The position numbers and the translations under genes were made by a program. The notes below the pieces were generated by a model. That model was not told where the DNA came from. It did no database searches and saw only the letters and a list, made by a program, of their open reading frames with translations. Source: Dendrobates tinctorius (taxonomy: Eukaryota). From it: a stretch of 64,000 nt of DNA. Of this stretch, positions 1 through 48,500 are shown piece by piece (within the stretch, counting starts at the first letter, position 1; each line of letters starts with the position of its first letter). The stretch covers positions 30,566,001 through 30,630,000 of the forward strand of contig NW_027361752.1 of the NCBI RefSeq assembly GCF_039654945.1, written 5' to 3'.

Positions 1-385
1 CTTAGATAACTCTTTCGTATTGGCCATGGTGGATAGGTTGGAGTGTGATTGATTGGGTGTGCTGAAAGGTGTATTTTACACAGTTAATGAGTTCAAACTG
101 GTGCAATTTATCCAGATAATGAGTGCAGAGTAGGAGGGCTTCTTAAAGAAAAACTAACAGGTCTGTGAGAGCCAGAATACTTGCTAGTTGTTAGGTGATC
201 AAATACTTATTTCATGCAATAAAATGCAATTTAATTATTTAAAAATCATAGAATGTGATTTTCAGGGGTTTATTTATGTTTAGACTGTCCCTCACATTTG
301 AAACATATGATAAAAATTACAGACCTCTCCATTCTTTGTAGGTGGGAAAACTTCGGCAGTGTATAAATACTTATTTTTCTCACTG
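1..385 (-). mobile_element. Tc1/mariner (IR/DR type) terminal fragment, cut by the window edge
   Basis: Ends ...aaatacttatttttctcactg followed by TA (386-387). The aaatacttattt motif is repeated (~201 and ~365). Layout resembles the end of the Tc1 at 34492-36980. Confidence 0.8.
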
Positions 386-23415: not shown

Positions 23416-25901
23416 TTAGCTGAGTGCTGCTTAGTATATTGGCGGGAAACAATCTATGTATGGCAGCTTCCGCGTGGCGGGAAAGTTATAGCACTTCTTG
23501 GCGGGTTGCGGTAGCGTTCTGCGGCTGTATTGCAGCTGCTGTGATACCCGTATGCGGAGCCGTGTGGGTGTTAGCGGTCCCCTACAGTCTATGCAATCTC
23601 CGCGTGCGACCGGCGGTCCTTTACTGAGCCCTGGGCTTGTCTCCCGCAGCTGTATGGCGGATGCTGTAGTACCCGTATGCGGAGCAGTCTGGGTGATAGC
23701 GGTCGCTTACAGCTTGAATTCACTGTTGCAGGCATATGGTGATCTGTTTTACTATTCTGCCTTCAGGCACGCTGACATGATGTGCAATCCAGCATACAGT
23801 ATAAACCACAGCTCTGTCTTCCAAAATAAGCAGACTGTTCTCTATAGTCTATCTTGTTTATTTGTGAAGAGTATAGAACATGAGCGGTAAAACTACAAGG
23901 AATACAAATAACATGCATAAGTATTGGGCAGATGATCATAGCTAACACAATCACAGAAGTGTACATTGAGATGCAAACATTACATAGGAATACATTAGTT
24001 TATGATTACATTTAATGAGAACTGGAAACTAAAGGGGTTAATGACATCTATTGGCTGCTAGACAGTAAACAACACCTCTCTGAATCACTGCATTGCAAGA
24101 AAACACTGACTCTTACCAGATATCCTTTAGCCGGGTAGTGACTCAAGTAGAGAAGTTGCAGGAAAAACAAAGGTTACACAGGAGGACAAATAACATGTGC
24201 ATCCTATGAGATCCACAGAAGCAAAATGGCCCTTCTTCATCCCAGAATACATTGCTTCCTTCCTACAAAGCACTGCTTTAATCCCATAGTGCATTGCTTC
24301 TGTTAAAGTCACAGGCTTTATAATGCTATTGAAGACACTGCTATAAATTCAGCCACCACTAGATGGTGCTATAATCAACCCAGCACATAATAAAACATTC
24401 TTTGCCCTATTAAGAGGGCAGAACACTGATGAAGAACAAGTCCTTTAAAATAGCTGTTTGAAGATGGGAGTCTGACTTGGCGATTATTCTTAGCTAAGTT
24501 TCAAGTCTCAGTAAAAAGCTTTCCTTTTAAATTACCTATAATTGGTGGAATCTTTCTGAGACTGACATTAATGTGCACATAATTTTAGGAACCCTTATAT
24601 ATCCGCAATAATAATAGTCAGATAAATTTAAGATACTACTCACACCACGATCACTCAAAGCGCTCAGATCAAATCAACCGAAACTGGTGTTGACATTTCA
24701 TGTTTATGAAGGAATTATGTAGCGATGGAGCTGGAGAGTACACCACTGACAGCTGAAATTAGATGGCAATTCTTGCTGAGAGCATATATTAAACAAGCCC
24801 TGGATTATACAATGGCTACGGAGTCTACATCAAGGAGTAGAAGTGTTACACAGCAGATGTTTTTTTACCATTTAAATGTATTTTGAAAATCAAGTGAATT
24901 ACACGTAGGCTCTCTGTTGCCTTTGAATATGGATGTGGATTGCAGCTTCAAAGATATTTTAAAATGTCAAAGGTACTGGGGGAAAAACGCAGGGGGTAAG
25001 ATTTAGAGAACAAAGGAAATTAAATTAGGAAATTCTGATTTATTATGCTTTTAGTCACACCGAAGAAATAATGAACAATTCTCCATCTAATGAAAAGTCA
25101 GAGTGGACGAGTTATGTCCATAAACACTGTGCATTGTCTGTAATAAACCCTGTGTGTGTGCCTCCCCCAGGTGATATACAGTGATATATGAGGATTCATA
25201 TGTTTTTATGGTCAATGATTTCTAAGTCATAGACTGCATGAAATAGTCTCACTAACAGATTTTCCCATCGTCCGGAAAAAAAGGTGAATGTCTGTCCTTT
25301 AACTATGTGTCATTTTTAGGCAAACTATTATGTGCTTGTCATCATTTCCTTAATTGGATTTTCCTATTCCTTGAAAAAGCATAAATTATTTAAAGTTCAT
25401 AATGAAATTCTGTCTGTCTGAGGCCACCAAAAGGGAGCCTAGAGGATGTGTCACAAAGCTATCCCCTTTACTAATAGAAGTTGTTTCCATGATGCGTTGA
25501 TCAGTTTGGGTTCTGCCATTGAAATAAATGGTTGGTTTGATACAAAACACATAAATCGGCCATAGCTTATCTTTGTAAGCAGCTATTATTGGCTTAAAAA
25601 GGGGATCCCTAAAATATGTACCCTTTCCACAAGCCTATATAAACTAAGAGAATAATATCCTTAATGCAACCCTCTACCATAGGGCTGAAATGTAACTCAA
25701 AATTTCTGTTGTATTGTCGACGTATCTGGGCCCCTTTTTTGCTTCCCACTGCCTCCTCTACTTAGAACTGCATTCCTTTCCTCCCAGTGCCAAGATTGCT
25801 ACCACAGTAGTATTGGGGAGTACAACAGTAAGTCTAAACCATATCTCCATCTTTCAATCCTATCCCAAAGCAGAGGTAAAAACAGGGGATGCATGGTTTA
25901 A

Positions 25902-27915: not shown

Positions 27916-30657
27916 ATGCCACCCAAGACAGCAACCAGGCGCAGGAGAAGGCAGGAGACCACTGCAGCACCATCCGCACCACCACCACCCCAAATGGAGC
28001 AGCAAATAGAACATGCTGAGGAGGGGAGGCCAGCAGCAGATGAGAGACGGTAATTATCAAATAACCCATTCCTCCAAACTAGGGCTATTGAATATCAAGA
28101 TATTCATTGGCCCTTTGTTTCTCTTTATTCAACAGCCGCCCAATAGATGCAGCAGCAGCAGCAGCAATGGCAGCAGCTGGAACACCACCCACAGGCATGG
28201 AGTGTGGCCACCAGGAAGACAGCACATCATCTTCTGGGAGCCCTCCCTCGCATCGTCAGCGTTTGACGGTAAGTTTTTATTTCCAAAATCCATCTTCTCT
28301 GTAATATATGTCTATTCATTGCCTTTTATTTCAAAACAGGAATCACAAGATGAAGAGGAGCTCCCAGAAGAAGAAGGAAGGGGTGGACAGACACCTGGAG
28401 TGGGCTCACAATTGGTAAGTTTTTTGCATCAAACGCAGAAACACAACATCACACTACACACAACACATAGAAAACAATGTTCTGCAGACCACACACAGCA
28501 AACAAATGCCTACATCCAAAGACATAACATTTTTTTTTTCTTCTCTAGTCTTCCCAATCTGGTGCTTGGCCAAGAGGTCCTCGCAGTGCCTCCCAGGGTC
28601 GTCGGCGACAGCAACGCGGCGGTCACCAGCGTGTAAGTATAAATATTTTTGCTTTTTTTTTTGCACTTTTTATTTCATTTCTTTTGTGGAGGCTAATTAT
28701 GTTATTTTTGTCTTTTTCTTTAATAGCCTTCACAGCGTGCTCCCGACTCTGACGGTGAGGATGGAGGGATTGATGTGGACCGCCTCATCGATCTCGTCAG
28801 AGAAAGGGAGCCGCTCTGGAATATGGCTGACCGCCGCCACGCTGACCTGATCGTTACCCAACGACTCTGGGAGGAAATCTGTTCGCTCCTTGTGGGCCGC
28901 TGGGAGGACCTCGAAGCTCGGGCCCAGATTAAAGAGCGTAAGTATATACAGTACCGATTGCTTGATGTAAACCAGTGTTTCCCGAACTCCAGTCCTCGTG
29001 GTCCCCACGGATCATGTGTTCAGGATTTCTATTTACTATAGAAATCCTGAAAACATGACCCCTGGGGACCATGAGGACTGGAGTTTGGGAAACACTGATG
29101 TTGTATACTAACCACTCCTTTCTCGTTTCAGGGAACAGAATTGTGAATCGGTGGCGGTCTGTGAGAGATCGTTTCAAGAAGGAGTTCAATAAAGAGATGC
29201 GGGCCCCGAGTGGATCTGGAGGACGCAGGAGCAAGTACAAGTACGCAGAAGCCCTGTCGTTCCTCCGGGAAACAATGGTCACCAGAAGGTAAATATTACA
29301 CACCACATGTGAAAAAAAATGTTATATGTAAAAATTTTTTTCAGCCAGGGCCATACCATGTCAGTATTTTAATTGTTTTTTTTTCTCTTTATTCCACAGC
29401 ACGGTGAGCAGCACTCGGGAGCCGGCACGATTGGACCCTTCTGAGGCGATCCCTGAGGAGACCGGCACCGAGGGACACTTCGACCGCCCCGGTACATCTG
29501 CACCATCCACCAGCACAGGAGCATCGTGGCCGCCTACATTACATGAAGCTGCTGGTGAGGAGATCGCTTTCCCTTTACCCCACCGTTCTGCCCCTGCCAC
29601 CTCTAGTACACCTGCGGGTACTGGGCGGCAGCGGCAGAGGGGTCAGGAAAAGACTTATGCGCCAGAGTTCTTGCATCTGAATGCATCTTTCCAGAACTGT
29701 CTAAAAGTCTTGTCAGAGCAAATCTCCGCAGGCTATCAGCAGATCAACTCCAGCATTCTGGAGGTGAAGACACTTCTGCAAACCATGCATTCAGAAGCAA
29801 GATCTTCGCCAAACCACACCTTTTTCAGGTCTGTTGTGGAGCGCATGGAAACGCTCTCTCCTGCCCAGCAGATGCATGTAATGCATTCATGCCACGCTGC
29901 TCTCCAGCAAGTTACCTCCCAACCTCCTCCTCCTCCCACCACAGTAGTTCCTCCACCTGCACCCCCTCCAGCCACTTTCCATCCTCCCCCTCCTATTACA
30001 TCTACACCCCCTCCAGCCACTTTCCATCCTCCCCCTCCTATTACATCTACACCCCCTCCAGCCACTTTCCATCCTCCCCCTCCTATTACATACCATCCAC
30101 CTCCAGCCACTTTCCATCCTCCCCCTCCTATTACATACCATCCACCTCCCCAGCACCATCCACCTCCCCAGCACCATCCACCTCCCCAGCACCATCCACC
30201 TCCCCAGCACCAGCAACCTCCCCAGCACCAGCAACCTCACCAGTACCAGCAACCTCCACAGTACCTGCAAACTCCCCAGTACCAGCAACCTGCCCCGTAC
30301 CAGACATCTCCCCACTTCCAGCAACCTGCCCCGTACCAGACATCTCCCCACTTCCAGCAACCTGCCCCGTACCAGACATCTCCCCACTTCCAGAAACCTG
30401 CCCTGTACCAAACTCCTTCCCCATACAACTTGCCATCAACATCATCTGCTCCTACAGTCCCTGCCCAACCCTCCACTCCACCACCCACCACCTCTTCTGC
30501 TTCCCACATGTCCACCCATTCTGTAGTTTTTTCCACACCTTCACCTCTAACTGTTCCTTCCCCACCACGATCCCAGTCCTCTCTCCACACTCCCAGTGTC
30601 GAAGTGTCCCACAGCCCCTACAGCAGTATTTCCACCACACACTACACAGAATTATAA
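27916..30657 (+). CDS. Harbinger MADF/Myb-SANT protein with BESS-like motif and P/Q/H/Y repeat tail; exons 27916-28049, 28136-28268, 28340-28414, 28549-28632, 28727-28937, 29132-29288, 29400-30657 (683 aa)
   Basis: All introns are GT-AG with compatible phases; spliced length 2052 nt with no stop seen. MADF motifs LIDLVREREPLWNMADRRH..WEEIC and RWRSVRDRFKKE; basic N-terminal NLS-like RRRRR; aataaa at 30670. Confidence 0.85.
28973..29097. mobile_element. Short hAT (Charlie-like) MITE in intron 5 of the MADF gene
   Basis: TIRs cagtgtttcccgaactccagtcctc / gaggactggagtttgggaaacactg; TSD only partly conserved. Confidence 0.75.
29960..30410 (+). repeat. Coding tandem repeats: PPPATFHPPPPIT(ST/YH) x4, PPPQHH-type x~5, QQPAPYQTSPHF x3
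   Basis: In-frame tandem units (42, 18 and 36 bp) in the last MADF exon. Confidence 0.9.
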
Positions 30658-31157: not shown

Positions 31158-32575
31158 TCACACTCTGTCATCCTGCCAGTGTACTCTGCCTTGAGGTGAC
31201 ATAAAGTATAGTGCAAAATTGTCCCTCATTACTGAAACCGTCACAGAACTTCTAGTGGTAATGTCATGGTAATCTTGCAAGGTGGTTTCTTCAGAGGTGT
31301 CCTCAATGGAAATGGGTTCCTTGCAGATAACAAAATTGTGGAGTACCACGCACGCTTTGATCACCTCGTCCACAGTTTCTGTCTTGAGGTTGATCGCAGT
31401 CAATAGGACCCGCCATTTGGCTGTCAGAATACCAAAGGTACATTCAACCATTCTTCTTGCTCTTGTGAGGCGGTAATTAAAAATGCGTTTTGGTCTTGTC
31501 AATCCTCTGCTAGAGTACGGTTTCAAAAGGTGTTCTGACAGCTGGAAGGCTTCATCCCCTACACAGACAAATGGCATAGGTGGACCAGATGTTTGCGGCA
31601 GCGGCCTAGGTGGTGGGAACTGGAAGGTGTTTCCATACAGTTTACGCCCCATGGCAGACAGTTTGAAAACTTGAGAGTCATTGGAGCGGCCATAGGCCCC
31701 AATATCAACCGCAATAAATTTGTATTCCGCGTCAGCGATGGCCATGAGGACAATTGAAAAATATTTCTGGTAATTGAAATATTCCGATCCCGATCCAGCT
31801 GGCTTTACAATGCGGATATGTTTCCCGTCCACAGCGCCAAGCAGTTGGGAAACTGACATATCTGTTGAAACTTGTCAGCAATTTCAATCCACCTCTCTGT
31901 TGTGGGCTCTGGTAAAAACTCTTCAGCTAAGGAGTCCCACAGTGCACGGCATGTGTACTTCACAATTCCAGATATGGTGGAAATCCCGAGTCTGTACTGG
32001 AAATGCAGTGACGAAAGGGATTCTCCAGTTGCAAGAAATCTGTGGGGAATTAAAAAACAATAAATTAGTTTTAAATCACAGCATTACATACCAAAACTGA
32101 CCTATAACACTTGGAGATACAAATTACCACCAACAAGATTGCAGTGAAAGTGTGCTCTGATGCGATCATATCCAATAAATGTGGCTTACCTTAAAGTCAC
32201 CATCAGACGCTCTGCGGGTGAAACAGAGAAGCGGCAATAGGTGTCCGCTTTTCTTATGAGGTGTGCAATGCGCTCCACCAAGTAATCAAAATTCTCCATT
32301 TTCATCCTAACATATCCAAAAAATTTATCCGGGTTTCGTCGAAGGTCCATGCATAGTGTAGAATAGACCCCACGCGTCATTCTCTTGGCTGTGATGGGGT
32401 GGATCCACAAACGTCGTCTACGATGCCTGATGCGCTGCTGTCTCGCTCTCTCCTTCTCCAGAACAATCACCCTCAAACGATTTGCCTCCGCTGTAAAATC
32501 CGCCAAATTCTTCAAAATATTTCCAATGACAACATCCATCTTCGCCAGTAACTTGCTCTTCTCTCCAACCTGCAC
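31158..32575 (-). pseudogene. Harbinger DDE transposase, 2 exons (32190-32575, 31158-32039), single frameshift near 31840
   Basis: LMVTLR/FLATGES across a GT-AG intron (32040-32189); GAVDGKH, DIGAYGRSNDSQVF, VGDEAF, RARRMVECTFGILTAKWR, CVVLHNF. One base missing in FPNCLGAVDG. Confidence 0.93.
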
Positions 32576-34164: not shown

Positions 34165-34489
34165 CCCCTTTGCCTAAAGCCAGGGGTTTGGGCACTTTCA
34201 ATAACCAAACATGGAAGTCTAGAAAGGGCTTCTGCATTACCATGTATCTTACCAGGCCTGTGCTCCACATGAAAACTAAAGTCACCTGGGAATTCTTCCC
34301 CTTCCTTTCCCTCATCCAACTCAGTAGCGCATGATATGACGCTAGCCGGAACTTTCAGCCTAAAAGGTAGCACCTGAGAGTGTCAATTGCCCATTTGATG
34401 GCCAAGCACTCTTTCTCCACAATAGCATAGTTCTTTTCATAGGAGGAGAGTTTCCTACTCAGGCATTGGACTAGATGTTCATCCCCATC
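34165..34489 (-). pseudogene. Gmr1-like RNase H C-terminal remnant
   Basis: SRKLSSYEKNYAIVEKECLAIKWAI; FHVEHRPGKIHGNAEALSR; runs into the PPT and LTR. Confidence 0.8.
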
Positions 34490-34774
34490 TACAGTGGGGA
34501 AAAAAAGTATTTAGTCAGCCACCAATTGTGCAAGTTCTCCCACTGAAAAAGATGAGAGAGGCCTGTAATTGACATCATAGGTAGACCACAACTATGAGAG
34601 TCAAAATGAGAAAATAAATCCAGAAAATCACCTTGTCTGATTTGGTGAGATTTATTTTTCAAATTGGTCACCTAAAAACATGCAAGATTTCTGGCTCTCA
34701 CAGACTTGTAACATCTTCTTTAAGAGGCTCCTCTGTCCTCCACTAGGCATTGCTCCTACTAGCCAGTTTCCTAC

Positions 34775-34818
34775 TCCACACTGATGAGGGGCAATACCCC
34801 GAAACAGCTGTCTGTGGA
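34775..34818 (+). ncRNA. Type I hammerhead ribozyme, copy 1 (predicted cleavage after C34812)
   Basis: uccaca-CUGAUGA-GGGG caaua CCCC-GAAAC agcu GUC-ugugga: full conserved core, stems I and II, short palindromic stem III. Confidence 0.93.
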
Positions 34819-35126
34819 TGGATACCATGTTTTGGCATAGGTGGTTTCCTTCATTGGAGACTGCCCTTCCCGTGGTTGTTCCTTCCCGGTGAAAGACCTG
34901 GCTAGTCATTGCTTGCATTGAGAAACATGTGATGGTGTCTCCGCGGCTGTTGATTTACATGTTTTTGCATATTTCCCATAAGGGATGGGGGCATTGCTCT
35001 AGAATCACTGCGTTGAGAAACATGTGATGGTGTCTCCGCAGTGTCGGATGTTGATCTCCATGAGGTCACTCTTCCTCATTTTCACAGTCTTTTACTAGGC
35101 ATTGCTCCTACTAGCCAGTTTCCTAC

Positions 35127-35170
35127 TCCACACTGATGAGGGGCAATACCCCGAAACAGCTGTCTGTGGA
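35127..35170 (+). ncRNA. Type I hammerhead ribozyme, copy 2
   Basis: Identical to copy 1. Confidence 0.93.
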
Positions 35171-35478
35171 TGGATACCATGTTTTGGCATAGGTGGTTTC
35201 CTTCATTGGAGACTGCCCTTCCCGTGGTTGTTCCTTCCCGGCAAAAGACCTGGCTAGTCATTGCTTGCGTTGAGAAACATGTGATGGTGTCTCCGCGGCT
35301 GTTGATTTACATGTTTTTGCATATTTCCCATAAGGGATGGGGGCATTGCTCTAGAATCACTGCATTGAGAAACATGTGATGGTGTCTCCGCAGTGTCGGA
35401 TGTTGATCTCCATGAGGTCACTCATCCTCATTTTCACAGTCTTTTACTAGGCATTGCTCCTACTAGCCAGTTTCCTAC

Positions 35479-35522
35479 TCCACACTGATGAGGGGCAATA
35501 CCCCGAAACAGCTGTCTGTGGA
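35479..35522 (+). ncRNA. Type I hammerhead ribozyme, copy 3
   Basis: Identical to copy 1. Confidence 0.93.
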
Positions 35523-35751
35523 TGGATACCATGTTTTGGCATAGGTGGTTTCCTTCAATGGAGACTGCCCTTCCCGTGGTTGTTCCTTCCCGGTGAAAGA
35601 CCTGGCTAGTCATTGCTTGCGTTGAGAAACATGTGATGGTGTCTCCGCGGCTGTTGACTCATTAGCTGTAGTAATGGCACCTGTTCGAACTTGCTATCAG
35701 TATAAAAGACACCTGTCCACAATCTCAAACAGTCACACTCCAAACTTCACT

Positions 35752-36766
35752 ACGGTGAAGACCAAAGAGCTGTTGAAGGACACCAGAAACAAAATTATAG
35801 CCCTGCACCAGGCTGGGAAGACTGAATCTGCAATGGGCAAGCAGCTTGATCTGATGAAATCAACTGTGGGAGCAATGATAAGAAAATGAAAGACATACAA
35901 GACCACTGATGATCTCCTTTGATCTGGGGCTCCACACAAGATCTCACCCCGTGGGGTCAATATGATCACAAGAACAGTGAGCAAAAATACCAGAACCACA
36001 CAGGGGGAATGACCTGCATAGAGCTGGGACCACTGTAACAACGGCTACCATCAGTAACACTCTAGGCCGCCAGGGACTCAGATCCTGCAATGCCAGACGT
36101 GTACCCCAGCTTAATCCAGTACATGTCCAGACCCATCTGAAGTTTGCTAGAGAGCATTTGGATTATCCAGAAGAGTACTGGGAGAATGTCATATGGTCTG
36201 ATGAAACCAAAGTAGAACTGTTTGGTAGAAACAAAACTCGTTGTGTTTGGAGGAGACAGATTGCTGAGTTGCATCCAAAGAACTCCATACCTACTGTGAA
36301 GCATGGGGGTGGCAAACGCATGCTTTGGGGCTGTTTCTCTGCAACGGGACAAGGATGACTGATCCGTGTACATGAAAGAATGAATGGGGCTATGCATCGT
36401 GAGATTTTAAGTGCAAACCTCCTTCCATCAGCAAGGGCATTGAAGATGAAACATGGATGGGTCTTTCAGTATGATAATGATCCCAAATACATCACCAGGG
36501 CAATGAAGGAGTGGCTTCATAAGAAGCATATGAAGGTCTTGTAGTGGCCTAGCCAGTCTCCAGAACTCAACCCCATAAAAAACCTTTGGAAGGATTTAAA
36601 AGTCAGTGTTGCCCAGTGACAGGCCCAAAACATCACTGCTCTAGAGGAGATCTGCATGGAGGAATGGGCCAATATACCACCAACAGTGTGTGCCAAACTT
36701 GTGACGACTTACAGAAAACATTTGACTTCTGTCATTGCCAACAAAGGATAGATAACAAAATATTGA
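35752..36766 (+). pseudogene. Tc1 transposase, inactivated
   Basis: VKTKELLKDTRNKIIALHQAGK; WENVIWSDETKVELFG; TVKHGGGKRMLWGCFS; FQYDNDPK; WPSQSPELNPI. Start codon lost; stops and frameshifts present. Confidence 0.92.
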
Positions 36767-36982
36767 GATGAACTATTGTTAATGACTAAATACTTATTTT
36801 CCTCCATAATATGAAAAATAAATCTTGCCAAATCAGACAAGGTGATTTTCTGGATTTGTTTTCTCATTTTGACTCTCATAGCTGTGGTCTACCTATGATG
36901 TTAATTACAGACCTCTCTCATCTTTTTAAGTGAGAGAACTTGCTCAATTGGTGGCTGACTAAATACTTTTTTCCCCACTGTA

Positions 36983-38790
36983 TTTCCTGGGACAGCATAG
37001 CTCCCAAACTGACATCGGAGGTGTCCGTCTGGACCACGAGCTCCTTAGAGAAGTCAGTTGCAACCAAGACTGGCTGTTTACATAGAGTGAGCTTCAACTC
37101 CTGGAACACCATCTCTGCTTCAGAGGGCTATTTGGGCTTCAATGCTTCATGCACTTAAGAAGATATATCAGGGCGGAGGCTATCATGGATAAATTAGGGA
37201 TAAATCACCAACAGTATAGCACAATTCCCAGAAACTCCTTAACCTGCTTCTTGGATACCGGCTGCGGCCAATTCTAGATTGCCTCCACCTTCTTAACTTG
37301 TGGCATTATTTCATCCTTTCTGACAATGTAGCCCAAGTATTTTGCCTTTTGTTTCCCCATAGAACACTTCTTTAGGTCTATGCTTCCTTAGCGTATCCAG
37401 TGCCGCCTGGACCTTCTGCAGTTGAATTCCCCAATTCAGGCTAAAGATCACTATGTCGTCCAGGTAAGCTGCGGCGTATTTTTTGTGAGAGGCCCTCTGG
37501 AATGTAGCTGAGGCTCCCTGCAGTCCAAAGGACATCCTGGTATACTGAAAGCACCCATCAGGTATAGAGAAAGCCATCTTCTCCTTGGGGGATTTGCCAT
37601 TACCCTTTCGCTAGGTCCAGGGTGCTGATGTATCTGGCTATCTCTAGACTCTCAATGAGTTCATCAACATAGAACATCAGATGTGAATAGAATTTTGATA
37701 CCCTATTTAGCTTCCTGTAATTGTTTCATAAGTGCCATTCTCCATCAGGACAATGGAGCTTGAACAGACACTCTTTGAATCCTCTATAATGCCCAGATTC
37801 ATCATTCTCCTCACCTCATTCGAAATCACCTCCCAACATGCTTTGGGGATTCGATAGTGCTTTTGATTCGCCTGCACATGAGGTTCCATCAAGATCTCAT
37901 GCTCAACAACCTGCATACGTCCTGGCAACTTGGAAAACAGGTCTCGGTTTCGCTAAAGCTGTTCTCAGCACTGTTGTTTCTGGGCCAGTGTCAGTGTCTC
38001 TGACACTATTACATCCTCAACCTTGGCTTCAGGACTGGCCCCTAGGCACATTGCTTCCACCAATTCCCTGTCTCTCTATGGAGAATAGGCAATCCCAGTT
38101 TTGGCCATCCTTCTCCATGACCTTCTTAAGCATTTATTTCAAGGTCTTTTTGAATATTTCCACCACGCCATCCATCTGTAGATTGTACACCGACAGCCGG
38201 AGTTGTGTAATCTGGAGAGCCTTACACAACTCCCTCATCACTTTGGATATAAAAGGAAGTTCCTTGGTCCATCCGGATCTCTTATGGCAGGCCCGTCCTG
38301 GAGAAAATATAGACTAGCTCTTTGGCTATACTGCTGGCATAGGAGTTTCTTGATGATACCGACTCCGGATACCGTGTTGCATTGTCCATCACCACCGACT
38401 TAACAAAAGGCACAACAAGGTCCATGGCAATCCGGACAAATGATACCTCTATAACAGACAATAACAATACAGGACTGCAGAAGTGGGATATGGAAGCAGT
38501 TAGCTGACAGGCAGGGCATGACCCACAGTAGTTAACAATATCTCTGTAACACCCAGGCCAGTAAAATCTCTGAATGACCCGCTCTTGAGTTTTATCTACT
38601 CCCAGATGCTCAGCAAAGACATGAGAATGGTCTGGTTCTAGTATCATACGCCTATAGGCACTCGGTACTAGCAACTGCTCTATTACTTCCTCTCTCAGTT
38701 TAGTGACCCAATCTAGCAGCTCCTTATTTAAAACAAAATGTGGAAACCTAGTGTCTGCCCCTCGGCTCTTGAGCAACCCCATTTATCACA
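36983..38790 (-). pseudogene. Gmr1-like integrase followed by RT and RNase H start, degraded
   Basis: HSHVFAEHLGVDKT..FYWPG..CGSCPAC and IAMDLV (38282-38782) lie upstream of MSFGLQGASATFQR..AYLDDIVIFS (37311-37577) and QTDTSDVSLGAMLSQ. Confidence 0.88.
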
Positions 38791-38961
38791 GTCAGAAAAA
38801 AGAAAGAAAAAAATTCCAGCTACTATAAGATCCATTTATTGAGTGAAAAGTAAGACAGAGTTCACATGATTGTCTCTATTACGCGTTTCGAACACCCAGC
38901 TTTTTTGATAAAGAACACAGTGTGGGTGTTCGAAACGCGTAATAGAGACAATCATGTGAAC

Positions 38962-41900
38962 TGTTATGATTGAGTCACCGTAGGAGGCAAAAATAGAAAT
39001 GCTAGCTAAGTCCAGAAAACCAGAGAAGTTGGCAGCTATCGGATTGCAGACCCCTGAACCTATCAACACAACTAGCAGTAGCCGTGGGGGGCTCCTACGA
39101 TGCCCTAGGCCCCTCGATCACAGCCAGAGGACTACATAGCCTAAAGACAGAAAGGGAAATCTAAACTACCCCAGAGCAGACCCCAAAGTAAAAGGCAGCC
39201 CCCCACATATAATGACGGTGAAGCAAGAAGAAAGAACAAAACACAGACAGAAAGATAGACTGAGCAAAGATGGGGCCCACGCTAGCTTAGATAGGAAAGG
39301 ACAGGAAGGCTGCTGTCTGCAATCCGTGAAAACCCCTATGAAAATAAGAGCCAACAAACTGACAGTAAAAAAGGCCCTGAAGACGCTAGGCTTCAAAAAA
39401 GCTATGTCAGTACTCAGGAATATTCTGAAGACAGAGCAACAGGCAAAAGGAGATTCAGCTCTCCCCAGCAGGGAATGGCAGAATCCAGAAAAGCAAGGAA
39501 AACAAAACACTAATGCAAAAAGGCAAAGCAGAAATCTTAGCTTTAGATGAGCAGGAATCAGACTGGTTTCCTAGAAGTCCACAGAGAAATCACCCGCAGG
39601 CCAGAAGGGCGTCGGCAGCCTTATATCCAGTCATTAACTCCACTCAGCCAGTCATCATCATCAGCCCCAGGTGTTTGACAATCAGGCTCACTACCTTTCT
39701 TCACCAGAAGAGGGAGTTCCTCGGGCCTCAGTAGTGAAGGGGAAAATGAACTCACAACAGTACCTCCCCCTTGAGGAGGGGTCACCGAACCCTCAACCAC
39801 GCCACCAGGGCGATCAGGGTGAGCCCGATGAAAGACACGCACCAATCTTTTGGCATGAATATCAGAGGCAGAGACCCAGGAATTATCCTCCTGACCATAA
39901 CCCTTCCACTTAACCAAATACTGGAGTCTCCATCTAACCAGATGGGAATCCAGTACTTTCTCTACCTCATATTCCATGTTACCTTCAACCAATACAGGGT
40001 CTGGAGGTGCAACCCCCTGAACAACAGGTTCAACAAACCTATTCAACAAAGATTTATGGAACACATTATGGATTTTAAATGTGACAGGAAGAGCCAAACG
40101 AAAAGAGACCGGATTAATAATCTCCAAAATCTTGTAAGGTCCAATAAATCTAGGCTTAAACTTAGGAGAAGCCACCTTCATAGCAATATTTTTTGATGAT
40201 AACCACACCATATCACCAACCTTAAATTGGGGATCAATGGTCCTATGTCGGTTGGAACACCGCTGGGCCTTTTCCTGGGAGAGAGATAACTTATCCACCA
40301 CTTGGTCCCAGATCTGGTGCATTCTCTCCACCACAGTGTCAACCCCTGGGCAGGCGGAGGGCTCCACCTGCCCTGAAGAAAATCGAGGATGAAACCCAAA
40401 GTTAGAAAAAAAGGAGACATCAAAGTGGCAGAATTAGCTCTATTATTTAAAGCAATTTCGGCCAAGGGCAAAAATGAAACCCAATCATCCTGATCAGCAG
40501 AAATAAAACATCTCAAATATGACTCCAAGGTCTGGTTTGTTCTCTCTGTCTGCCCATTGGTCTGAGGGTGAAAAGCAGAGGAGAAGGACAACTGAATTCC
40601 CAGCTTGGAACAGAAAGTTCTCCAAAATCTAGACACAAACTGGACTCCTCTGTCAGATACAATGTTCTCAGGAATCCCGTGCAAGCGAACCACCTGTTGT
40701 AAAAACAGGGGCACCAATTCAGAGGAAGACGGCAACTTAGGGAGTGGTACAAGATGAACCATCTTAGAGAACCTATCACAAATCACCCAAATAACAGTCA
40801 TCCTTTGAGAGACAGGCATATCAGAGATGAAATCCATTGAAATATGGGTCCATGGCCTCTTGGGGACAGGCAAAGGCATCAACAACCCACTAGAGCGACA
40901 ACACGATTTAGACCGGGAGCACGTCCCACAGGAATGCACAAAATTCCTGACATCACGAGACAAGGCGGGCCACCAAAAAGACCGACTCACCAGATCTCTA
41001 GTACCAAAAATACCTGGATGACCAGCCAAAGCAGAGCAATGAACTTCAGACATCACTCTCTTCTTCCACTGGTCAGGAACATACAACTTTCCACTGGGAC
41101 AACGCTCAGGTTTGTCCTCCTGGAACTCTTCCAGAGCACGTCTCAAATCGGGCGAGATGGCAGAAAGAACTACCCCTTCGCCTAAGATGGTAGCAGGCTT
41201 GGTCACCACAGGAGAATCAGCAAAGAAGCTCCTAGAGAGGGCGTCAGCCTTGACATTCTTAGTTCCAGGAAGAAAAGAAACCACAAAATCAAAACGTATA
41301 AAAAACAAGGCCCACCTAGCCTGTCTAGGGTTCAAGCGCTTAGCCGACTCTAGGTAAATCAAATTCTTGTGGTCAGTGAGGACCACGACTTGATGCTTAT
41401 CTCCCTCCAACCAATGTCTCCACTCCTCAAATGCTCATTTCATGGCTAACAGTTCCCGATTCCCCACAACATAGTTACGTTGAGATGGAGAGAACTTTCG
41501 GGAAAAGAAAGCACAGGGATTCATTTTAGATGTTACAGGATCCTTTTGGGACAAAACAGCTCCTGCACCAATCTCAGAAGCATCCACCTCTACCTGGAAC
41601 GGAAGTGAGACATCAGGTTGCCGCAAAACCGGGGCGGAGGTGAATCTTCGCTTCAGCTCCTGAAAGGAAGAAACAGCCTCCGGAGACCAATTTAACACAT
41701 CAGCACCCTTCTTAGTCAAATCTGTCAATGGCTTGGCAATACTAGAAAATTTTGCTATAAATTTCCTATAAAAATTAGCAAAACCCAAAAACTTCTGGAG
41801 GGCCTTCAAAGAAGTGGGCTGAACCCAATCGTAAATGGCCTGTACCTTGGCCGGGTCCATTTCAATAGTTGACAGGTACAAAATAAATCCCAAAAAAGAA

Positions 41901-44745
41901 ATCCTCTGTAATCCAAAAAGGCATTTAGATCCTTTGACATACAGGGAATTCTCCCTCAAGATCCGGAACACAGTCCGAATATGTTCCACATGAGAATCCC
42001 AATCCTTGGAGAAGATCAAAATATCATCCAGATAGATAATCCAAAATTTATCAACAAAATCTCGGAAAATATCGTTCATGAAGCACTGGAAGACAGAAGG
42101 GGCATTAGTGAGCCCAAAAGGCATCACCAGGTACTCAAAATGTCCCTCCGGAGTATTAAACGCCGTCTTCCATTCATCCCCATGCTTAATGCGAATAAGA
42201 TTATATGCCCCCTGAGGTCAAGCTTGGTAAACCAGCAAGCACCTTTAACTCTGGAGAATAGATCCGAAATCAGGGGTAACGGATACTGATATTTAACAGT
42301 AATTTTGTTGAGAGCACGATAATCAATACAAGGTCTTAATGATCCATCCTTTTTGGCTACAAAAAAAAAAACGGCACCTAAGGGTGACGAGGATGGTCTA
42401 ATATGACCCTTCTCCAACGCCTCCTTAATATAGGATCGCATAGCCTCGTGCTCGGGTACAGATAAATTGAAGAGCCGACCCTTGGGAAATTTACACCCCG
42501 GGCTCAGTTCAATAGCACAGTCATAACTCCTATGAGGAGGCAGAGACGCAGACTCATTCTCACTAAATACATCATAAAAGTCCGCCAAATAATCAGGAAC
42601 ATCATGCGACTGAGGAGAGGTGGAAAACACCGGAGCCTCACTAAAGGCACACCGACAACCCCAACTCACCACAGACACAGATTTCCAATCCAAAACTGGA
42701 TTATGAATTTGTAACCAGGGAAACCCCAGAAAAATAGTATCATGCAGATTATGTAACACCAAAAACCTGCAATTTTCTTGATGGTCTGGGGCGACCCACA
42801 TTACCACCTGGGTCCAAAACTGAGGTTTATTTTTAGCCAAAGGAGTAGCATCAATCCCCCTCAAAGGGATAGGCGTCTGCGGAGGGGTCATTGGAAATCC
42901 ACAATGTTTAGCAAAATCCAAGTCCATTAGGTTTAGAGCTGCTCCCGAATCCACAAAAGCCTTGGCGGAAAATGTGGACAGGGAGCAGATCAGAGTAATA
43001 GCCAGAAGAAACTTAGGTTGAACACCACCAACAGAAAACGTGTGTGCAAAGCGTTTCTCGCATTTAGGACAGACAGAAATAATATGCGAGGCATCTCCAC
43101 AGAAAATACACAACTTATTACGCCTTCTGAACTCCTGACGCTGTTCTCTGGAGAAAACTCTATCACATTGCATAGGTTCAGACATCTGTTCAACAGGTGG
43201 CAACACCTCTCGTGCAGCTCTGCGTTTGCGTAAACGCCGATCAACCTGAATGGCTAAAGACATAGAATCGTCAAGACCAGAGGGAACAGGAAATCCCACC
43301 ATAGTATCTTTTACGGCTTCTGACAACCCCTTCCGAAAGAGAGCAGCCAAGGCATTATCATTCCAGGTAGTAAGTACTGCCCACTTTCGGAATTTTTGAC
43401 AGTACAATTCTGCAGAATCACGACCCTGGTTCAATGCCAGCAGGGTCTTTTCAGCCTGATCAATGGCATTAGGTTCGTCATACAACAACCCCAAGGCCTG
43501 AAAAAATGCGTTCACATTAGTCAGAATAGGATCATCTGGTTTCAAATAAAACGCCCAATCCTGGGGATCGTCACGCAGCAAAGAGATGACAATTTTAACC
43601 TGCTGCGTGGAGCTCCCTGACGAGTTAGGCTTCAAGGCAAAAAATAATTTACAATTATTTTTGAAATTCAAAAATTTCGACCGATCCCCAAAAAATACAT
43701 CAGGTGTAGGAATCTTTGGTTCAGCAGCATGTGAATGAGCAAGGTAGGCGGAAATTCCCCGCACTTCCGCAGCGAGCTGCTTCACACGATCAGACAATTG
43801 CTTTATCTCCATTGAGAGAAAAAAAAAATTCCCCCTACGGCCTCAGAGATATAGAGGAAAAAATATACACACCTTTTTTTTTTTTTTTTTTTTACAATTC
43901 TTTCCTGCTATTGAGTACCCTAGAATCTGCGGTATGGCGGGTGATTCTGTTATGATTGAGTCACCGTAGGAGGCAAAAATAGAAATGCTAGCTAAGTCCA
44001 GAAAACCAGAGAAGTTGGCAGCTATCGGATTGCAGACCCCTGAACCTATCAACACAACTAGCAGTAGCCGTGGGGGGCTCCTACGATGCCCTAGGCCCCT
44101 CGATCACAGCCGGAGGACTACATAGCCTAAAGACAGAAAGGGAAATCTAAACTACCCCAGAGCAGACCCCAAAGTAAAAGGCAGCCCCCCACATATAATG
44201 ACGGTGAAGCAAGAAGAAAGAACAAAACACAGACAGAAAGATAGACTGAGCAAAGATGGGGCCCACGCTAGCTTAGATAGGAAAGGACAGGAAGGCTGCT
44301 GTCTGCAATCCGTGAAAACCCCTATGAAAATAAGAGCCAACAAACTGACAGTAAAAATGGCCCTGAAGACGCTAGGCTTCAAAAAAGCTATGTCAGTACT
44401 CAGGAATATTCTGAAGACAGAGCAACAGGCAAAAGGAGATTCAGCTCTCCCCAGCAGGGAATGGCAGAATCCAGAAAAGCAAGGAAAACAAAACACTAAT
44501 GCAAAAAGGCAAAGCAGAAATCTTAGCTTTAGATGAGCAGGAATCAGACTGGTTTCCTAGAAGTCCACAGAGAAATCACCCGCAGGCCAGAAGGGCGTCG
44601 GCAGCCTTATATCCAGTCATTAACTCCACTCAGCCAGTCATCATCATCAGCCCCAGGTGTTTGACAATCAGGCTCACTACCTTTCTTCACCAGAAGAGGG
44701 AGTTCCTCGGGCCTCAGTAGTGAAGGGGAAAATGAACTCACAACA
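38962..44745 (-). mobile_element. Full-length chromoviral Gypsy (Tf1/sushi type), recent
   Basis: 798-bp LTRs (38962-39759, 43948-44745) TGT..ACA with 2 differences seen; TSD gtgaac; PPT aagggggaggtac; gag-PR-RT-RH-IN-chromodomain. Confidence 0.96.
39760..43812 (-). pseudogene. Gypsy gag-pol polyprotein with chromodomain, few lesions
   Basis: [14 protein letters not shown]; FVDSGA; LRPCIDYR; YLDDIL; EVDAS; HISMDF; SDRGVQF; GPY; YEVEKVLDS..YLVKWKGY..NSW. Frameshifts near 42210 and 40410, stop at 41435. Confidence 0.93.
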
Positions 44746-45207
44746 GTGAACTCTGTCTTACTTTTCACTCAATAAATGGATCTTATAGTAGCTGGAATTT
44801 TTTTCTTTCTTTTTTCTGGAGTAACTGCACGCTGGACGACGTGATTCCTTGCTCCCACACACCACAGGCTGTTTTCAAGTGAGCTGGTAAGACCCTTTTT
44901 TCTCTATTTATCACAGTCACATTGTCAAATTCCCCTTTTAAAGTAAGGTCATGCATTTGAGCAGTCAAAAAAATTCCCCCAAAAAACACTAATTCAGGAA
45001 TCTCAACCTAATTGGTAACCGTTTAGTCCTCATCACTAGCAAGGACACTCAGGGGGAACTCATCTGACTTTAACTGCAATGGGTATTCATCATGGTTGAA
45101 TCAGCTCCTTTCTTAGTCACTTGGTACTCCCACTTTCTGCCATAAGTTTCAAAAGAAGCTAAAGTCCCACCCTATTATATACTGGTGTAGCAGGTCTTTA
45201 CCCACAT

Positions 45208-45539: not shown

Positions 45540-48500
45540 TGTTAGGCGTCAGATTCCTGGCACTGCACAGCGGGAATCCAGAGCCAGACATCCTGTGGTC
45601 TCCCATTCGCCTCTGACCACTCAAGCTCCTGCTCAGCAATCACGGCGAGCCAGGCAATCTCCTCAGACTCGTTCTGCGAGCCTGGATGTTGCTGCCACCT
45701 CCAGTGCAGCAATGGTAGCGCAACCTGCTTTGCAGGGAGCCGCTCCAGAAGCTAAGTCCTCGTGCCGTGCTACTGGGCATGTCCGCAATGTGCCCTCTCA
45801 GTGGAGAGCAGGGGTCACATGTGCAGGTCCTGTGTCGGATCTGATTGGTCCTTCCCACAGTATTGGAAGGTCCCGGAAGCTCATGGCTATAAAAACCCCG
45901 CATGGCGGCTCGGCCATGCGCTAGTGTAGCATATTATTCTGTGTGTGTATGGTGATGGATGCATGGACTGGTGTTTGACTCATTATGAAACCCCTACCCT
46001 CTGATATTACGAGTGGTGACTGAGTGTGTATAGTCAGCTCCAGGGTTGTGGCAAGCTACACGCCACTTGCTCCACGCCTACACTAGCGTCCATCGGTGCC
46101 CGGTCCTCGGCGCCGACGCTTGCGGCTTTCTCTGCCGCTGCGCTGTAGTAACAGCAGCTATTGGTGTTCGCGGCTGCGACGCCACATGCAGGCCCCTGTG
46201 ACGCTAACAGGGCCCGCGCCTTTGCTTTAGTGTTCGCCAAGCGACTCTGTGTTTGTACGGAGCCGCTCTTAGCGTTCGGGTGACGTTAACCCGAGCGCAG
46301 TACCGCACCTACTAGGTGCATCTGCCATTGTTCAGCAGCGGTCTTGTCATCTACCGCACGGTGGACCCCAGGCGGCGAACGCACCTACTATTATTTAGAT
46401 TTGGTGCGTTCCGCCGACCCTAACATTACACTAGCGCCAGGGTCTGGCTGGCAATGGCAGACGTGCAGCAGCTGCAGCGCTACATTCGGCAACTGGAGAG
46501 CAGGTTGGCGGCTATTGAGAGCACCAACTCAGCTGCAAATGCTGCGCTAGCTGCTGCTCAGACAGTCGCCGAGGCTGTCTCACGTGCGCCCACACTTTTG
46601 CCCTCGCCGACAATTTCTCGCCTCCCGCTCCCCGAAAAGTTTTCGGGTGACAGCACCACCTGTAGGGGATTTGTTAGCCAGTGCTCCATTCAGGTGGAGT
46701 TGCTGGCTGCACGGTTTCCTACAGAGCGGGCTAAGGTGGGGTTTATTGTCTCCTTGTTGTCTGGCCGGGCATTACAGTGGGTCACGCCATTGTGGGAACG
46801 TGATGATCCCGTGGTTCAGAGACCTGCTCAGTTCCTCGCGGCTCTGAAGCAAGTCTTCTTGGGACCACGGGTCACACACGATACGGCTCTCCAACTGTTA
46901 TCCCTAACACAAGGCTCACTCTCGGTTAGCCATTATGTTGTCCGGTTTCGGACACTGGCTTCCGAATTAGAGTGGCCGGACAAAGTCTTAGTCCCGGTGT
47001 TTTGGAGAGGCCTGGCTGAGCACGTCAAGGATGCTCTAGCCACTAGGGAGATTCCCACAAATCTGGAGGAATTGATCGCCGTTTCCACCCGCATCGATCT
47101 CCGCTACGCGGAGCGCGGGTTGGAACGAGCGCAATCCAGACGTAGGGTTAATTTGGCCCCCACCTTTACCGTGCCGCTGGAAGACCCCGCACAAGAGCTC
47201 TCTTCCTCTGAGTCTATGGAGGTGTCTCGCACCGGCACTAAGCCGCGTCCGATGCGATGCTCTGTGCGCTGTTATCAGTGCCGATAGTTTGGCCATTTGG
47301 CTGGCACATGTCCTCAGCGACCGAAAAGACGACCACGTCCAGTGGTCGTAGGTGGTGGTCAATCCAAAATGGGACCCTTTTCACCCAAACCGGTGTTCCG
47401 GGGTACTTTAGATACCTGGGAGGCAGAGGTCACCCTGGATTCCGGGGCCGAGGGGAACTTTATGTCCTCGACTTTTGCCCAGAGTCACGCTATCCCTCTG
47501 GTGTTACTTTCTCAACCTCTGTCCATTAGGGTCGTAAATGGGGCACCGTTATCGTCTCAGGTGATCCATCAGACAGTCCCACTCGGACTCTCTATTTCAC
47601 CCTCGCATCAGGAGACTCTGTCCCTGCTTATCATGCCCAATGGCATCGATCAGGTGCTCCTCGGAGTTCCCTGTCTTCGTTGCCACTCCCCTCACGTTGA
47701 CTGGGTTTCGGGGAGGATACTGGGCTGGGGCAAGGACTGTTAGGGAAGGTGTCTGAGGGGCAGTGTTCAGGTGGCTTCCACTGAAGTGCCTGCGGATCTC
47801 TCCGCGCTCCCCAGGCCCTACCACCAGTACGCGGACATCTTCTCTAAGAAGTTTGCGGAGACGCTCCCGCCGCACCGTTCCTATGATTGCCCGATCGATC
47901 TCCTGCCAGGTACAGAGCCTCCCCGAGGCTGTGTTTATCCGTTATCACTCCCTGAGACGTAGGCTATGTCTCAATATATCCGGGAGAACCTGGCTAGGGG
48001 TTTTATCAGGAAATCTGTGTCACCGGCTGGTGCAGGGTTCTTCTTCGTACAGAAGAAGAATGGAGAGTTCCGTCCCTGCATTGACTACAGAGGTCTCAAT
48101 GCTATCACGGTTAAAAACAAATACCCCCTACCATTGATCGCGGAGTTATTTGACAGGTTGCGGGGGGCCCGGATCTTTACTAAATTAGATCTGCGGGGGG
48201 CATACAACCTGATCCGCATTCGCGAAGGAAACGAATGGAAGACAGCTTTTAATACCAGGGATGGCCATTACAAATACCTGGTTATGCCCTTTGGCCTTTG
48301 TAATGCGCCAGCTGTCTTCCAAGATTTTGTCAACGACGTCTTCCGCGACATGCTCTCTACCTTGGTGGTGGTCTATCTGGATGACATACTCATCTTTTTG
48401 CCAGATATTACCACCCACCGGAGAGACGTCTGCAGGGTCTTCGACCGTCTGCGGGCGAACTCGCTATTCGCCAAGCTGGAGAAGTGCCAGTTTGAGCAGG

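What the first reader, a model, noticed from the sequence alone, without database searches (positions are those of the whole stretch)
34745..35656. Tandem 352-bp units each with an intact hammerhead ribozyme: a candidate retrozyme / circular-RNA replicon
Seen: three identical type I hammerheads exactly 352 nt apart, each with the full CUGAUGA..GAAA core, a GUC site, a 6-bp stem I extendable past a UAC bulge and a stem II loop CAAUA. The units show no recognisable coding capacity, and the ~2.6-unit array starts and stops at arbitrary points in the unit. Established: non-LTR retrozymes and newt satellite 2 are tandem hammerhead repeats processed to monomeric RNAs that can circularise. Inference: transcripts self-cleave to 352-nt monomers, and this copy arose by rolling-circle reverse transcription of a circle. 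Near-identity of the units indicates recent insertion. The class is known, but this family may be undescribed.
Basis: partly seen in the sequence, partly recalled or inferred. Interest (0 to 1): 0.9.

Follow-up and report, generated by a model that had tools for sequence, protein, structure and literature searches.

The report
Frog hammerhead retrozyme array, ordinary copy
This is a 915-base insert made of 2.6 head-to-tail copies of an abundant 352-base non-coding repeat. Each full copy carries an intact self-cutting hammerhead RNA motif, so it is a clean example of an already described class of animal mobile element (a non-LTR retrozyme).

Summary
A 352-bp tandem repeat of 2.6 units lies at 34742-35657. 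It carries three identical type I hammerheads with complete cores, a 6-bp stem I, a UAC bulge and a CAAUA loop 2. The predicted cuts fall after 34812, 35164 and 35516.

Helix III is only A-U plus C-G, capped by the palindrome AGCU. Two copies co-fold into a double hammerhead, the form known from newt and axolotl repeats.

Rfam Hammerhead_1 aligns end to end but scores 20.2 bits, below its threshold of 34.

The array is an insertion. It interrupts a decayed Tc1/Sleeping-Beauty-like transposon, and contigs from uninterrupted copies of that transposon run straight across the site. Only a 2-bp CT is duplicated there.

The family is very abundant in this organism's DNA and occurs in at least two others. 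A diverged relative of the ribozyme-proximal ~165 nt turns up in an RNA library of a fourth organism.

Transcription, cleavage, circles and rolling-circle reverse transcription were not shown here. They are inferred from the published retrozyme model.

This scan has already noted the same 352-nt family several times elsewhere in this genome. The class is known in amphibians, frogs included, so interest is low.

The parts
34742..35657 (+). Tandem array of the 352-bp retrozyme unit, 2.6 units. The inserted DNA is 915 nt: 34745-35659 if CT counts as a target duplication, or 34743-35657 if CT is microhomology.
   Evidence: TRF; blastn of the unit against the window; empty-site contigs.
34770..34821 (+). 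Hammerhead 1 (type I). CUGAUGA 34781-34787; stem II/loop 2 34788-34800; GAAA 34801-34804; palindrome ACAGCUGU 34804-34811; C17 = 34812.
35122..35173 (+). Hammerhead 2, identical to hammerhead 1; C17 = 35164. Rfam Hammerhead_1 aligns at 35127-35170 (20.2 bits).
35474..35525 (+). Hammerhead 3, identical to hammerhead 1; C17 = 35516.
34813..35164 (+). Predicted 352-nt monomer RNA 1, from cleavage site to cleavage site. Folded linear: -122.1 kcal/mol, z -3.4. Folded as a circle: -116.5 kcal/mol, z -2.9, 62% paired.
35165..35516 (+). Predicted monomer RNA 2. It differs from monomer 1 at 5 positions (unit positions 78, 79, 105, 200, 260), none in the ribozyme.
34913..34961 (+). First copy of an internal direct repeat of about 50 nt within the unit. 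Its partner lies at 35008-35062, about 90% identical with a 6-nt indel. The same pair recurs in each unit.
34743..34744 (.). CT at the left junction, repeated at 35658-35659. It is either a 2-bp target-site duplication or junction microhomology. ACT at 34742-34744 fits both the Tc1 sequence and the unit.
   Evidence: Contigs of uninterrupted Tc1 copies read CATTACCTGTAGTAATGGCA directly after 34744, which matches window 35660 onward. A diverged Tc1 copy at 60-180 (- strand) is collinear across the site.
34490..36983 (+). Host element: a decayed Tc1/Sleeping-Beauty-like DNA transposon. Inverted repeats lie at 34497-34665 and 36808-36976 (93% complementary). The HTH_SB domain is at 35755-35889. 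The array sits in the element's 5' leader, in the same orientation as the transposase remnant.
   Evidence: the left end at 34490 is taken from 413 contig loose ends.

Best explanation
This is one genomic copy of an abundant non-LTR retrozyme family, in what earlier scan notes call a frog. A 915-nt multimeric copy (2.6 units) of a 352-nt non-coding RNA was inserted into the 5' leader of a Tc1/Sleeping-Beauty-like transposon. The sequence shows that each unit boundary carries an intact classical metazoan type I hammerhead with a near-absent helix III capped by the palindrome AGCU. The rest is inferred from the published model. Read-through + strand transcripts pair two neighbouring ribozymes through the 8-nt palindrome ACAGCUGU into a double hammerhead. 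[quoted passage not shown] A host tRNA ligase circularises these RNAs. A reverse transcriptase, probably of a Penelope-like element, copies the circle for more than one round. The resulting multimeric cDNA, with arbitrary phase at both ends, is then integrated.
For: - Array and ribozymes: three identical complete hammerheads lie 352 nt apart, against a chance expectation of 0.01 per window.
- Rfam: Hammerhead_1 aligns end to end with all core positions matched. Its own consensus has a loop-less, palindrome-type helix III.
- Independent architecture check: 105 distinct hammerheads from metagenome contigs, unrelated to this unit outside the ribozyme, show the same build. Stem I is exactly 6 bp, 84-94% paired with several pair types. 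Then comes a UAY bulge (78 of 105) opposite a U (97 of 105), then pairing resumes.
- Dimer form: co-folding two 67-nt ribozyme segments gives the double hammerhead as the minimum-energy structure, -46.1 kcal/mol. The single hammerhead fold is -12.5 and loses to a non-catalytic fold at -20.3. This matches axolotl HHR_Amex1 and newt satellite 2, which cleave well only as dimers (PMC7229834).
- It is an insertion: contigs of uninterrupted Tc1 copies in four runs continue after 34744 with the sequence found at 35660.
- It is multi-copy: summed contig depth over the unit is about 1e6 in the DNA run, like the Tc1, against a few hundred to about 2,600 in the flank before it. Go-back-352 joints show other tandem copies. 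Runs of organisms B and C also hold it.
- Ends: neither end of the insert coincides with the cleavage site, so the template was not a cleaved linear monomer or multimer.
- No coding capacity, 48% GC.
Against: - Rfam score is below threshold.
- No evidence here for transcription, cleavage or circles. All runs were contigs. The two 'RNA?' runs may be DNA. The one certain RNA library, from another organism, holds only a relative of 34742-34906 and may carry DNA.
- Only 1 of 9 predicted Xenopus retrozyme dimers cleaved in vitro in Li et al. 2026, so a good motif does not guarantee activity.
- The junction shows only a 2-bp duplication. Published animal retrozymes have target duplications longer than 4 bp when present, and other copies in this genome are noted with 12-15 bp (unchecked scan notes).
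- No Penelope-like element lies in the window.
Confidence: 0.85

Rival explanations
1. The family is the same, but this copy was copied from a linear, uncleaved multimeric transcript of another genomic array, not from a circle.
For: Multimeric retrozyme RNAs exist in axolotl tissues. A multimer also gives arbitrary end phases. The single hammerhead fold is disfavoured, so some transcripts should escape cleavage.
Against: Every difference between units is private to one unit, and at least two are CpG transitions. That fits units identical at insertion, as a single circle would give. A multimer from a homogeneous array would look the same, so the test is weak.
Confidence: 0.25
2. This copy entered by repair of a DNA break, which captured a retrozyme cDNA or an extrachromosomal circle of satellite DNA by end joining. 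It did not enter by endonuclease-driven target-primed reverse transcription.
For: Only CT is duplicated. A 3-nt overlap (ACT) joins the target and the unit at the left junction. There is no overlap at the right junction.
Against: Penelope-like elements are said to give target duplications of variable length (my recollection, not checked here). One junction pair cannot decide between the two routes.
Confidence: 0.2
3. The hammerheads are inert relics. The array is ordinary satellite DNA that grew in place by unequal crossing-over.
For: 8 of 9 predicted Xenopus dimers did not cleave in vitro. Li et al. discuss local amplification of such repeats.
Against: The whole 915 nt is absent from paralogous Tc1 copies, with a clean junction. 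The listed variants among genomic copies avoid the core and stems; only loop 2 varies (34795 T>C, insertions after 34792 and 34795). The segment 34890-35093 has at least eight common variants (15 rows of that table were not shown). The ribozyme-proximal part is kept at 95% or more in another organism while the rest has diverged.
Confidence: 0.08

Closest known systems
Axolotl non-LTR retrozymes Rtz_331 / HHR_Amex1 and Rtz_353 / HHR_Amex2 (Cervera and de la Pena 2020, PMC7229834)
   Same: Tandem non-coding units of 330-350 bp. Type I hammerhead with a single extra base pair in helix III capped by a palindromic tetraloop (the Amex1 type). Loop 1-loop 2 contact motifs. Weak as a monomer and efficient as a dimer. 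Very high copy number.
   Different: Here the Amex1-type helix III rides on a 352-bp unit; in axolotl the 350-bp unit carries the Amex2 type with a 2-bp stem. Sequence similarity of the unit bodies could not be tested, because no axolotl sequence was to hand. Expression and circles are shown for axolotl, not here.
Newt satellite 2 (about 330 bp; Epstein and Gall 1987; Forster et al. 1988, cited through PMC7229834 and PMC7761336)
   Same: Tandem repeat with a type I hammerhead that is active as a double hammerhead.
   Different: It was described as satellite DNA in salamanders. This copy is a short dispersed insertion with a defined empty site.
Xenopus non-LTR retrozyme families, including REP4_XT (Li, Clavereau and Pollet 2026, bioRxiv 10.64898/2026.07.22.740005)
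   Same: Frog tandem hammerhead repeats. This array meets their criteria: two or more consecutive complete hammerheads and MFE below -5 kcal/mol. They propose derivation from, and mobilisation by, Penelope-like elements.
   Different: Identity with any of their 57 Xenopus families could not be checked; the consensus sequences are not in the held files. No similarity to a Penelope pseudo-LTR was tested.
Minimal hammerheads in pseudo-LTRs of Penelope-like elements (PMC4209133; Lunse et al. 2017, cited in PMC7761336)
   Same: Type I topology, tandem arrangement, cleavage as dimers.
   Different: Those variants lack helix III and the loop-loop contacts and belong to an RT-encoding element. This one is a full classical hammerhead in a non-coding unit.
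Plant LTR retrozymes (PMC4918200)
   Same: Non-autonomous elements with hammerhead-delimited RNA that circularises.
   Different: The plant elements have type III hammerheads, LTRs, a primer-binding site and polypurine tract, 4-bp TSDs and 600-1000 nt circles. None of these is seen here.

Membership tests
Hammerhead ribozyme, type I | Conserved core: C3 U4 G5 A6 N7 G8 A9, G12 A13 A14, the A15.1-U16.1 pair, and H17 at the cleavage site | tested here: met
   CUGAUGA, GAAA and GUC are present and identical in all three copies.
Hammerhead ribozyme, type I | Three helices around the core, with helix I open (type I topology) | tested here: met
   Stem I is 6 bp plus 2 bp beyond the bulge. Stem II is 4 bp and begins with G10.1-C11.1. 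Helix III is A-U plus C-G only. The metagenome set shows the same architecture with covarying stems.
Hammerhead ribozyme, type I | Rfam RF00163 score at or above the gathering threshold (34 bits) | tested here: not met
   20.2 bits, E 0.0056 in an 86-nt search, full model 1-45 aligned. No hit at gathering score in the window.
Hammerhead ribozyme, type I | Self-cleavage after position 17 | not testable with these tools
   This needs in vitro transcription or mapping of RNA ends. All runs available were contigs.
Amphibian dimeric (double) hammerhead | Helix III reduced to one extra pair capped by a palindromic tetraloop, so that two copies can form an intermolecular helix III | tested here: met
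   ACAGCUGU is self-complementary. The co-fold minimum-energy structure is the double hammerhead: -46.1 kcal/mol against 2 x -20.3 for the separate segments. The feature is as described in PMC7229834.
Animal non-LTR retrozyme | Tandem units of roughly 170-400 bp, each with a type I hammerhead; two or more consecutive complete hammerheads | tested here: met
   Period 352, three hammerheads.
Animal non-LTR retrozyme | No protein-coding capacity; GC below 50% | tested here: met
   The longest stop-free stretch is 79 codons. GC is 48%. The array is bounded directly by Tc1 sequence on both sides, so it has no LTRs. I did not search for PBS or PPT motifs.
Animal non-LTR retrozyme | Dispersed multi-copy family whose copies are insertions | tested here: met
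   Empty-site contigs, very high summed contig depth over the unit and go-back-352 joints elsewhere. Runs from 10 studies hold it.
Animal non-LTR retrozyme | Target-site duplication longer than 4 bp, when one is present | tested here: not met
   Only CT is duplicated. The published wording is 'when present', so this does not exclude membership.
Animal non-LTR retrozyme | Expressed as linear and circular monomer RNAs | tested here: inconclusive
   Contigs of an RNA-seq library from another organism cover a relative of 34742-34906. The 'RNA?' runs may be DNA. Contigs give no RNA ends and cannot show circles.
Animal non-LTR retrozyme | Relatedness to pseudo-LTRs of Penelope-like elements, or co-occurrence with such elements | not tested
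   No Penelope-like element in the window. No Penelope sequences of this genome were to hand.

The most novel reading that the evidence does not exclude
The roughly 165 nt around the ribozyme (34742-34906: the hammerhead plus about 95 nt downstream of the cut, including a strong hairpin) may be a selected RNA module with a job beyond cleavage, for instance recognition by the ligase or the reverse transcriptase. It shows few common variants among this genome's copies. It is kept at 95% or more in an RNA library of another organism, while the rest of the unit there has fallen below 85%.
Probability: 0.15. Interest if true: 0.45.

Novelty: new member of a known kind. Interest (0 to 1): 0.15.

Why it matters
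It matters little on its own. It is a tidy, well-bounded example of a non-LTR retrozyme. It has an empty site for comparison, intact ribozymes and a near-absent target duplication. It could serve as one data point in a genome-wide study of how these elements integrate and which part of the RNA is under constraint. The class, its dimeric hammerhead and its presence in amphibians, frogs included, are already published.

Tried and rejected
- Rfam at gathering score on the whole window gave nothing. In E-value mode on 1.2 kb, clan competition left only a poor Hammerhead_3 match of 16 bits. Only an 86-nt search exposed the Hammerhead_1 alignment.
- Exact-pattern scans for this family's ribozyme found nothing in metagenome or viral contigs. 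A looser pattern returned 120 contigs that share only the ribozyme, with blastn alignments of 47 nt or less. I used them solely as an independent check of the architecture.
- A hammerhead on the minus strand, which RNA-to-RNA rolling-circle replication in both polarities would need, was not found.
- A Penelope-like partner in the window was not found. The neighbours are Ty3/gypsy, BEL/Pao-like, Harbinger and Tc1 elements.
- The supplement of Li et al. held only an oligo order form, not family sequences.
- Reads: all runs are kept as contigs, so RNA starts, ends, strand and level could not be read. I laid only 34200-35093, which holds one unit length, to avoid sending a long tandem repeat.
- Findings look-ups by sequence and by expression words were blank.
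- Complex prediction, structure prediction and the protein searches were not relevant.

Full report
**1. What is there**

Tandem Repeats Finder reports a single array at 34742-35657 with period 352, 2.6 copies, 98% matches and no indels. The 25-nt string CTGATGA-GGGG-CAATA-CCCC-GAAAC occurs three times, at 34781, 35133 and 35485, on the + strand only.

I wrote a descriptor for a complete type I hammerhead: stem I of at least 5 bp, CUGANGA, stem II of at least 3 bp, GAAA, a helix III, then U and a non-G. It hits just these three places in the 64-kb window on either strand. It places the cleavage nucleotide C17 at 34812, 35164 and 35516. In 300 dinucleotide-preserving shuffles of the window it hit 3 times in all, or 0.01 per window.

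- a 6-bp stem I (UCCACA/UGUGGA);
- a UAC bulge opposite a single U, followed by CC/GG;
- a 4-bp stem II that starts with the conserved G10.1-C11.1 pair;
- loop 2 of CAAUA.

The three copies are of course not independent, because they are one repeated unit.

**2. Rfam**

At gathering score nothing in the window matches any Rfam family. On 1.2 kb in E-value mode only a poor Hammerhead_3 alignment survives clan competition, at 16 bits.

On 86 nt around the second ribozyme, Hammerhead_1 (RF00163) aligns over its whole model (1-45) at 35127-35170 with every core position matched. The score is 20.2 bits against a threshold of 34. The Rfam consensus itself has a helix III drawn as four pairs with no loop (GAAAC-GCGC-GUC). 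That is the same palindrome-type arrangement as GAAAC-AGCU-GUC here.

**3. Independent check of the architecture**

A pattern that fixes only CUGAUGAG and CGAAACAGCUGUC returned 120 metagenome contigs. Outside the ribozyme they are unrelated to this unit; blastn alignments reach at most 47 nt.

Their 105 distinct hammerheads show the following:
- exactly six stem I pairs, 84-94% paired, with several pair types at each position;
- an abrupt drop to 8-13% pairing at the next three positions;
- a UAY triplet there in 78 of 105, opposite a U in 97 of 105;
- resumed pairing beyond it (76-79%).

The window's ribozyme has each of these features. It is therefore a member of the classical metazoan type I class with the stem I bulge-loop 2 contact, not a chance look-alike.

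**4. Double hammerhead**

Beyond the obligatory A15.1-U16.1 pair, helix III has one C-G pair and the tetraloop AGCU. The stretch ACAGCUGU (34804-34811 and its repeats) is thus self-complementary.

- Folded alone, a 67-nt ribozyme segment prefers a non-catalytic structure at -20.3 kcal/mol. The hammerhead fold is worth only -12.5.
- Two segments co-folded give the double hammerhead as the minimum-energy structure, at -46.1 kcal/mol. It has an 8-bp intermolecular helix III and stems I formed in trans.

This is the behaviour published for newt satellite 2 and for axolotl HHR_Amex1. [quoted passage not shown] An earlier scan note on this same stretch (s1-364618) reached the same reading.

**5. The unit**

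The 352-nt unit has 48% GC and a CpG ratio of 0.39. No stop-free stretch over 79 codons occurs in the array, and there is no ribozyme on the minus strand.

It contains an internal direct repeat of about 50 nt, at unit positions 101-149 and 196-250, about 90% identical.

The monomer folds more stably than shuffled controls. Linear, it reaches -122.1 kcal/mol with z -3.4. As a circle, it reaches -116.5 kcal/mol with z -2.9 and 62% of bases paired. Stem I closes the main domain.

**6. It is an insertion, and where**

Both flanks belong to one Tc1/Sleeping-Beauty-like transposon (about 34490-36983). Its inverted repeats lie at 34497-34665 and 36808-36976 and are 93% complementary. A remnant HTH_SB domain lies at 35755-35889.

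Logan contigs from four runs align to the Tc1 up to 34744. They then continue with CATTACCTGTAGTAATGGCA, which is the sequence at window 35660 onward. A diverged second Tc1 copy at 60-180 on the minus strand is likewise collinear across the site.

So 915 nt were inserted between CCACT and CATTAG. Only CT (34743-34744 and 35658-35659) is present on both sides. ACT at the left junction fits both the target and the unit, and there is no overlap at the right junction.

Counted from the cleavage site, the insert runs from unit position 282-285 to position 141, about 2.6 turns later. Neither end lies at the cleavage site. The array has the same orientation as the transposase remnant and sits in its 5' leader, which would allow read-through transcription. 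That last point is inference.

**7. Age**

Units 1 and 2 differ at 5 of 352 positions. The partial third unit differs from them at 2 and 3 of 141 positions. The first partial unit is identical to the others.

Each of the 7 differences is private to one unit. At least two are CpG to CpA changes. At 34917 the other two units and most genomic copies carry G. This fits units that were identical at insertion and have decayed by about 0.8% since. The insert is young, and younger than its host transposon, but it is not brand new.

**8. Family and distribution**

Twenty public runs from ten studies hold part of the array. They include runs of organisms A, B and C with 43-83% of the sampled words. Several are very small runs (21-51 million letters), which implies high abundance.

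In the DNA run, summed contig depth over the unit is about 1e6. That is similar to the Tc1 and far above the few hundred to about 2,600 of the flank before it. The tool warns that this figure is not a copy number.

Go-back-352 joints in two runs show further tandem copies.

Among the listed common variants, the ribozyme region shows only loop 2 changes (34795 T>C, insertions after 34792 and 34795) and one insertion after 34758. The segment 34890-35093 has at least eight variants at 13-82%. Fifteen rows of that table were not shown, so this contrast is provisional.

A true RNA-seq library of a fourth organism (X17) has contigs matching 34742-34906 with about two differences and one or two gaps per 81-89 aligned letters. 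It has nothing at 85% or more for the rest of the unit. The letters before 34742 in those contigs are only about 63% like the unit. Its family is therefore related, with the ribozyme-proximal part the most conserved.

This does not prove transcription, because the library also holds the Tc1 at high depth and could contain DNA.

Earlier notes of this scan call the genome a frog and list several other copies of a 351-354-nt hammerhead unit, some with TSDs of 12-15 bp. I did not verify those notes. The transposon content of the window is consistent with a lower vertebrate: Tc1/SB, Ty3/gypsy with chromodomain, BEL/Pao-like and Harbinger elements.

**9. Mechanism, and what is shown versus inferred**

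Shown by sequence:
- intact, identical classical hammerheads at unit spacing;
- a strong preference for the dimeric form;
- a non-coding unit;
- a bona fide insertion with permuted ends;
- a multi-copy family.

Inferred from the published retrozyme model (PMC7229834; PMC7761336; bioRxiv 10.64898/2026.07.22.740005):
- read-through transcription;
- co-transcriptional cleavage to 352-nt RNAs with 5'-OH and cyclic-phosphate ends;
- circularisation by a host tRNA ligase;
- multi-round reverse transcription of the circle;
- integration by the machinery of a Penelope-like element.

Cautions:
- Li et al. found cleavage for only one of nine predicted Xenopus dimers.
- An uncleaved linear multimer would give the same product as a circle.
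- The 2-bp duplication leaves open capture at a DNA break for this particular copy.
- No Penelope-like element is in the window.

**10. Comparison and verdict**

It works like, and by every sequence criterion I could test belongs to, the animal non-LTR retrozymes. Its ribozyme is of the newt / axolotl Amex1 type. The unmet items are the Rfam threshold and a TSD longer than 4 bp. The untestable items are cleavage and circles.

The class is known in amphibians and was surveyed in frogs in 2026. This scan has already met the same 352-nt family elsewhere in the genome. I file it as a new member of a known kind, of low interest.

The only mildly novel lead is the stronger conservation of the roughly 165 nt around the ribozyme.

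Noticed in passing
window 12940-14051: A perfect inverted repeat: two 555-nt arms, 100% complementary, with 2 nt between them. Another first-reader note (s1-364619) flags it as a hairpin insertion with a 14-bp TSD. My hammerhead scan found no motif in it.
   Followed up: no
window 38793-44818: A Ty3/gypsy LTR retrotransposon on the minus strand. It encodes gag, RT, RNase H, integrase and chromodomain, and its LTR segments at 38961-39260 and 43947-44246 are 100% identical. It is bracketed by 73-nt arms at 38793-38865 and 44746-44818 that are 100% complementary. A scan note (s1-364620) speaks of a fold-back with a variant hammerhead. My descriptor found no hammerhead there.
   Followed up: partly
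window 45540-51422 and 18290-24052: Two further LTR elements. One is a Ty3/gypsy on the + strand, with repeats at 46111-46410 and 51123-51422 (97% identical). The other is BEL/Pao-like (DUF5641 plus integrase), with repeats at 18290-18589 and 23753-24052 (96% identical). A Harbinger/PIF DDE transposase lies at 31158-31859. The window is almost wall-to-wall transposons.
   Followed up: partly
window 29900-30430: Proline- and serine-rich 18-nt and 45-nt tandem repeats lie inside a 417-codon open frame (29404-30657, + strand). The frame has no Pfam match. It could be a repetitive exon or a simple minisatellite.
   Followed up: no
loci L001-L120 (metagenome contigs, e.g. L051, L069, L077): More than 120 metagenome contigs carry classical type I hammerheads with the same GAAAC-AGCU-GUC palindrome and the UAY bulge. 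Three contigs have two ribozymes 713-790 nt apart. They are probably retrozymes of host animals in host-associated metagenomes.
   Followed up: partly
window 34913-34961 and 35008-35062 (and the same in each unit): The internal direct repeat of about 50 nt is spaced 95 nt apart. 352 minus 95 is 257, and a scan note (s1-389106) mentions a 257-nt hammerhead unit elsewhere in this genome. The 352-nt family might derive from a shorter one by internal duplication.
   Followed up: no
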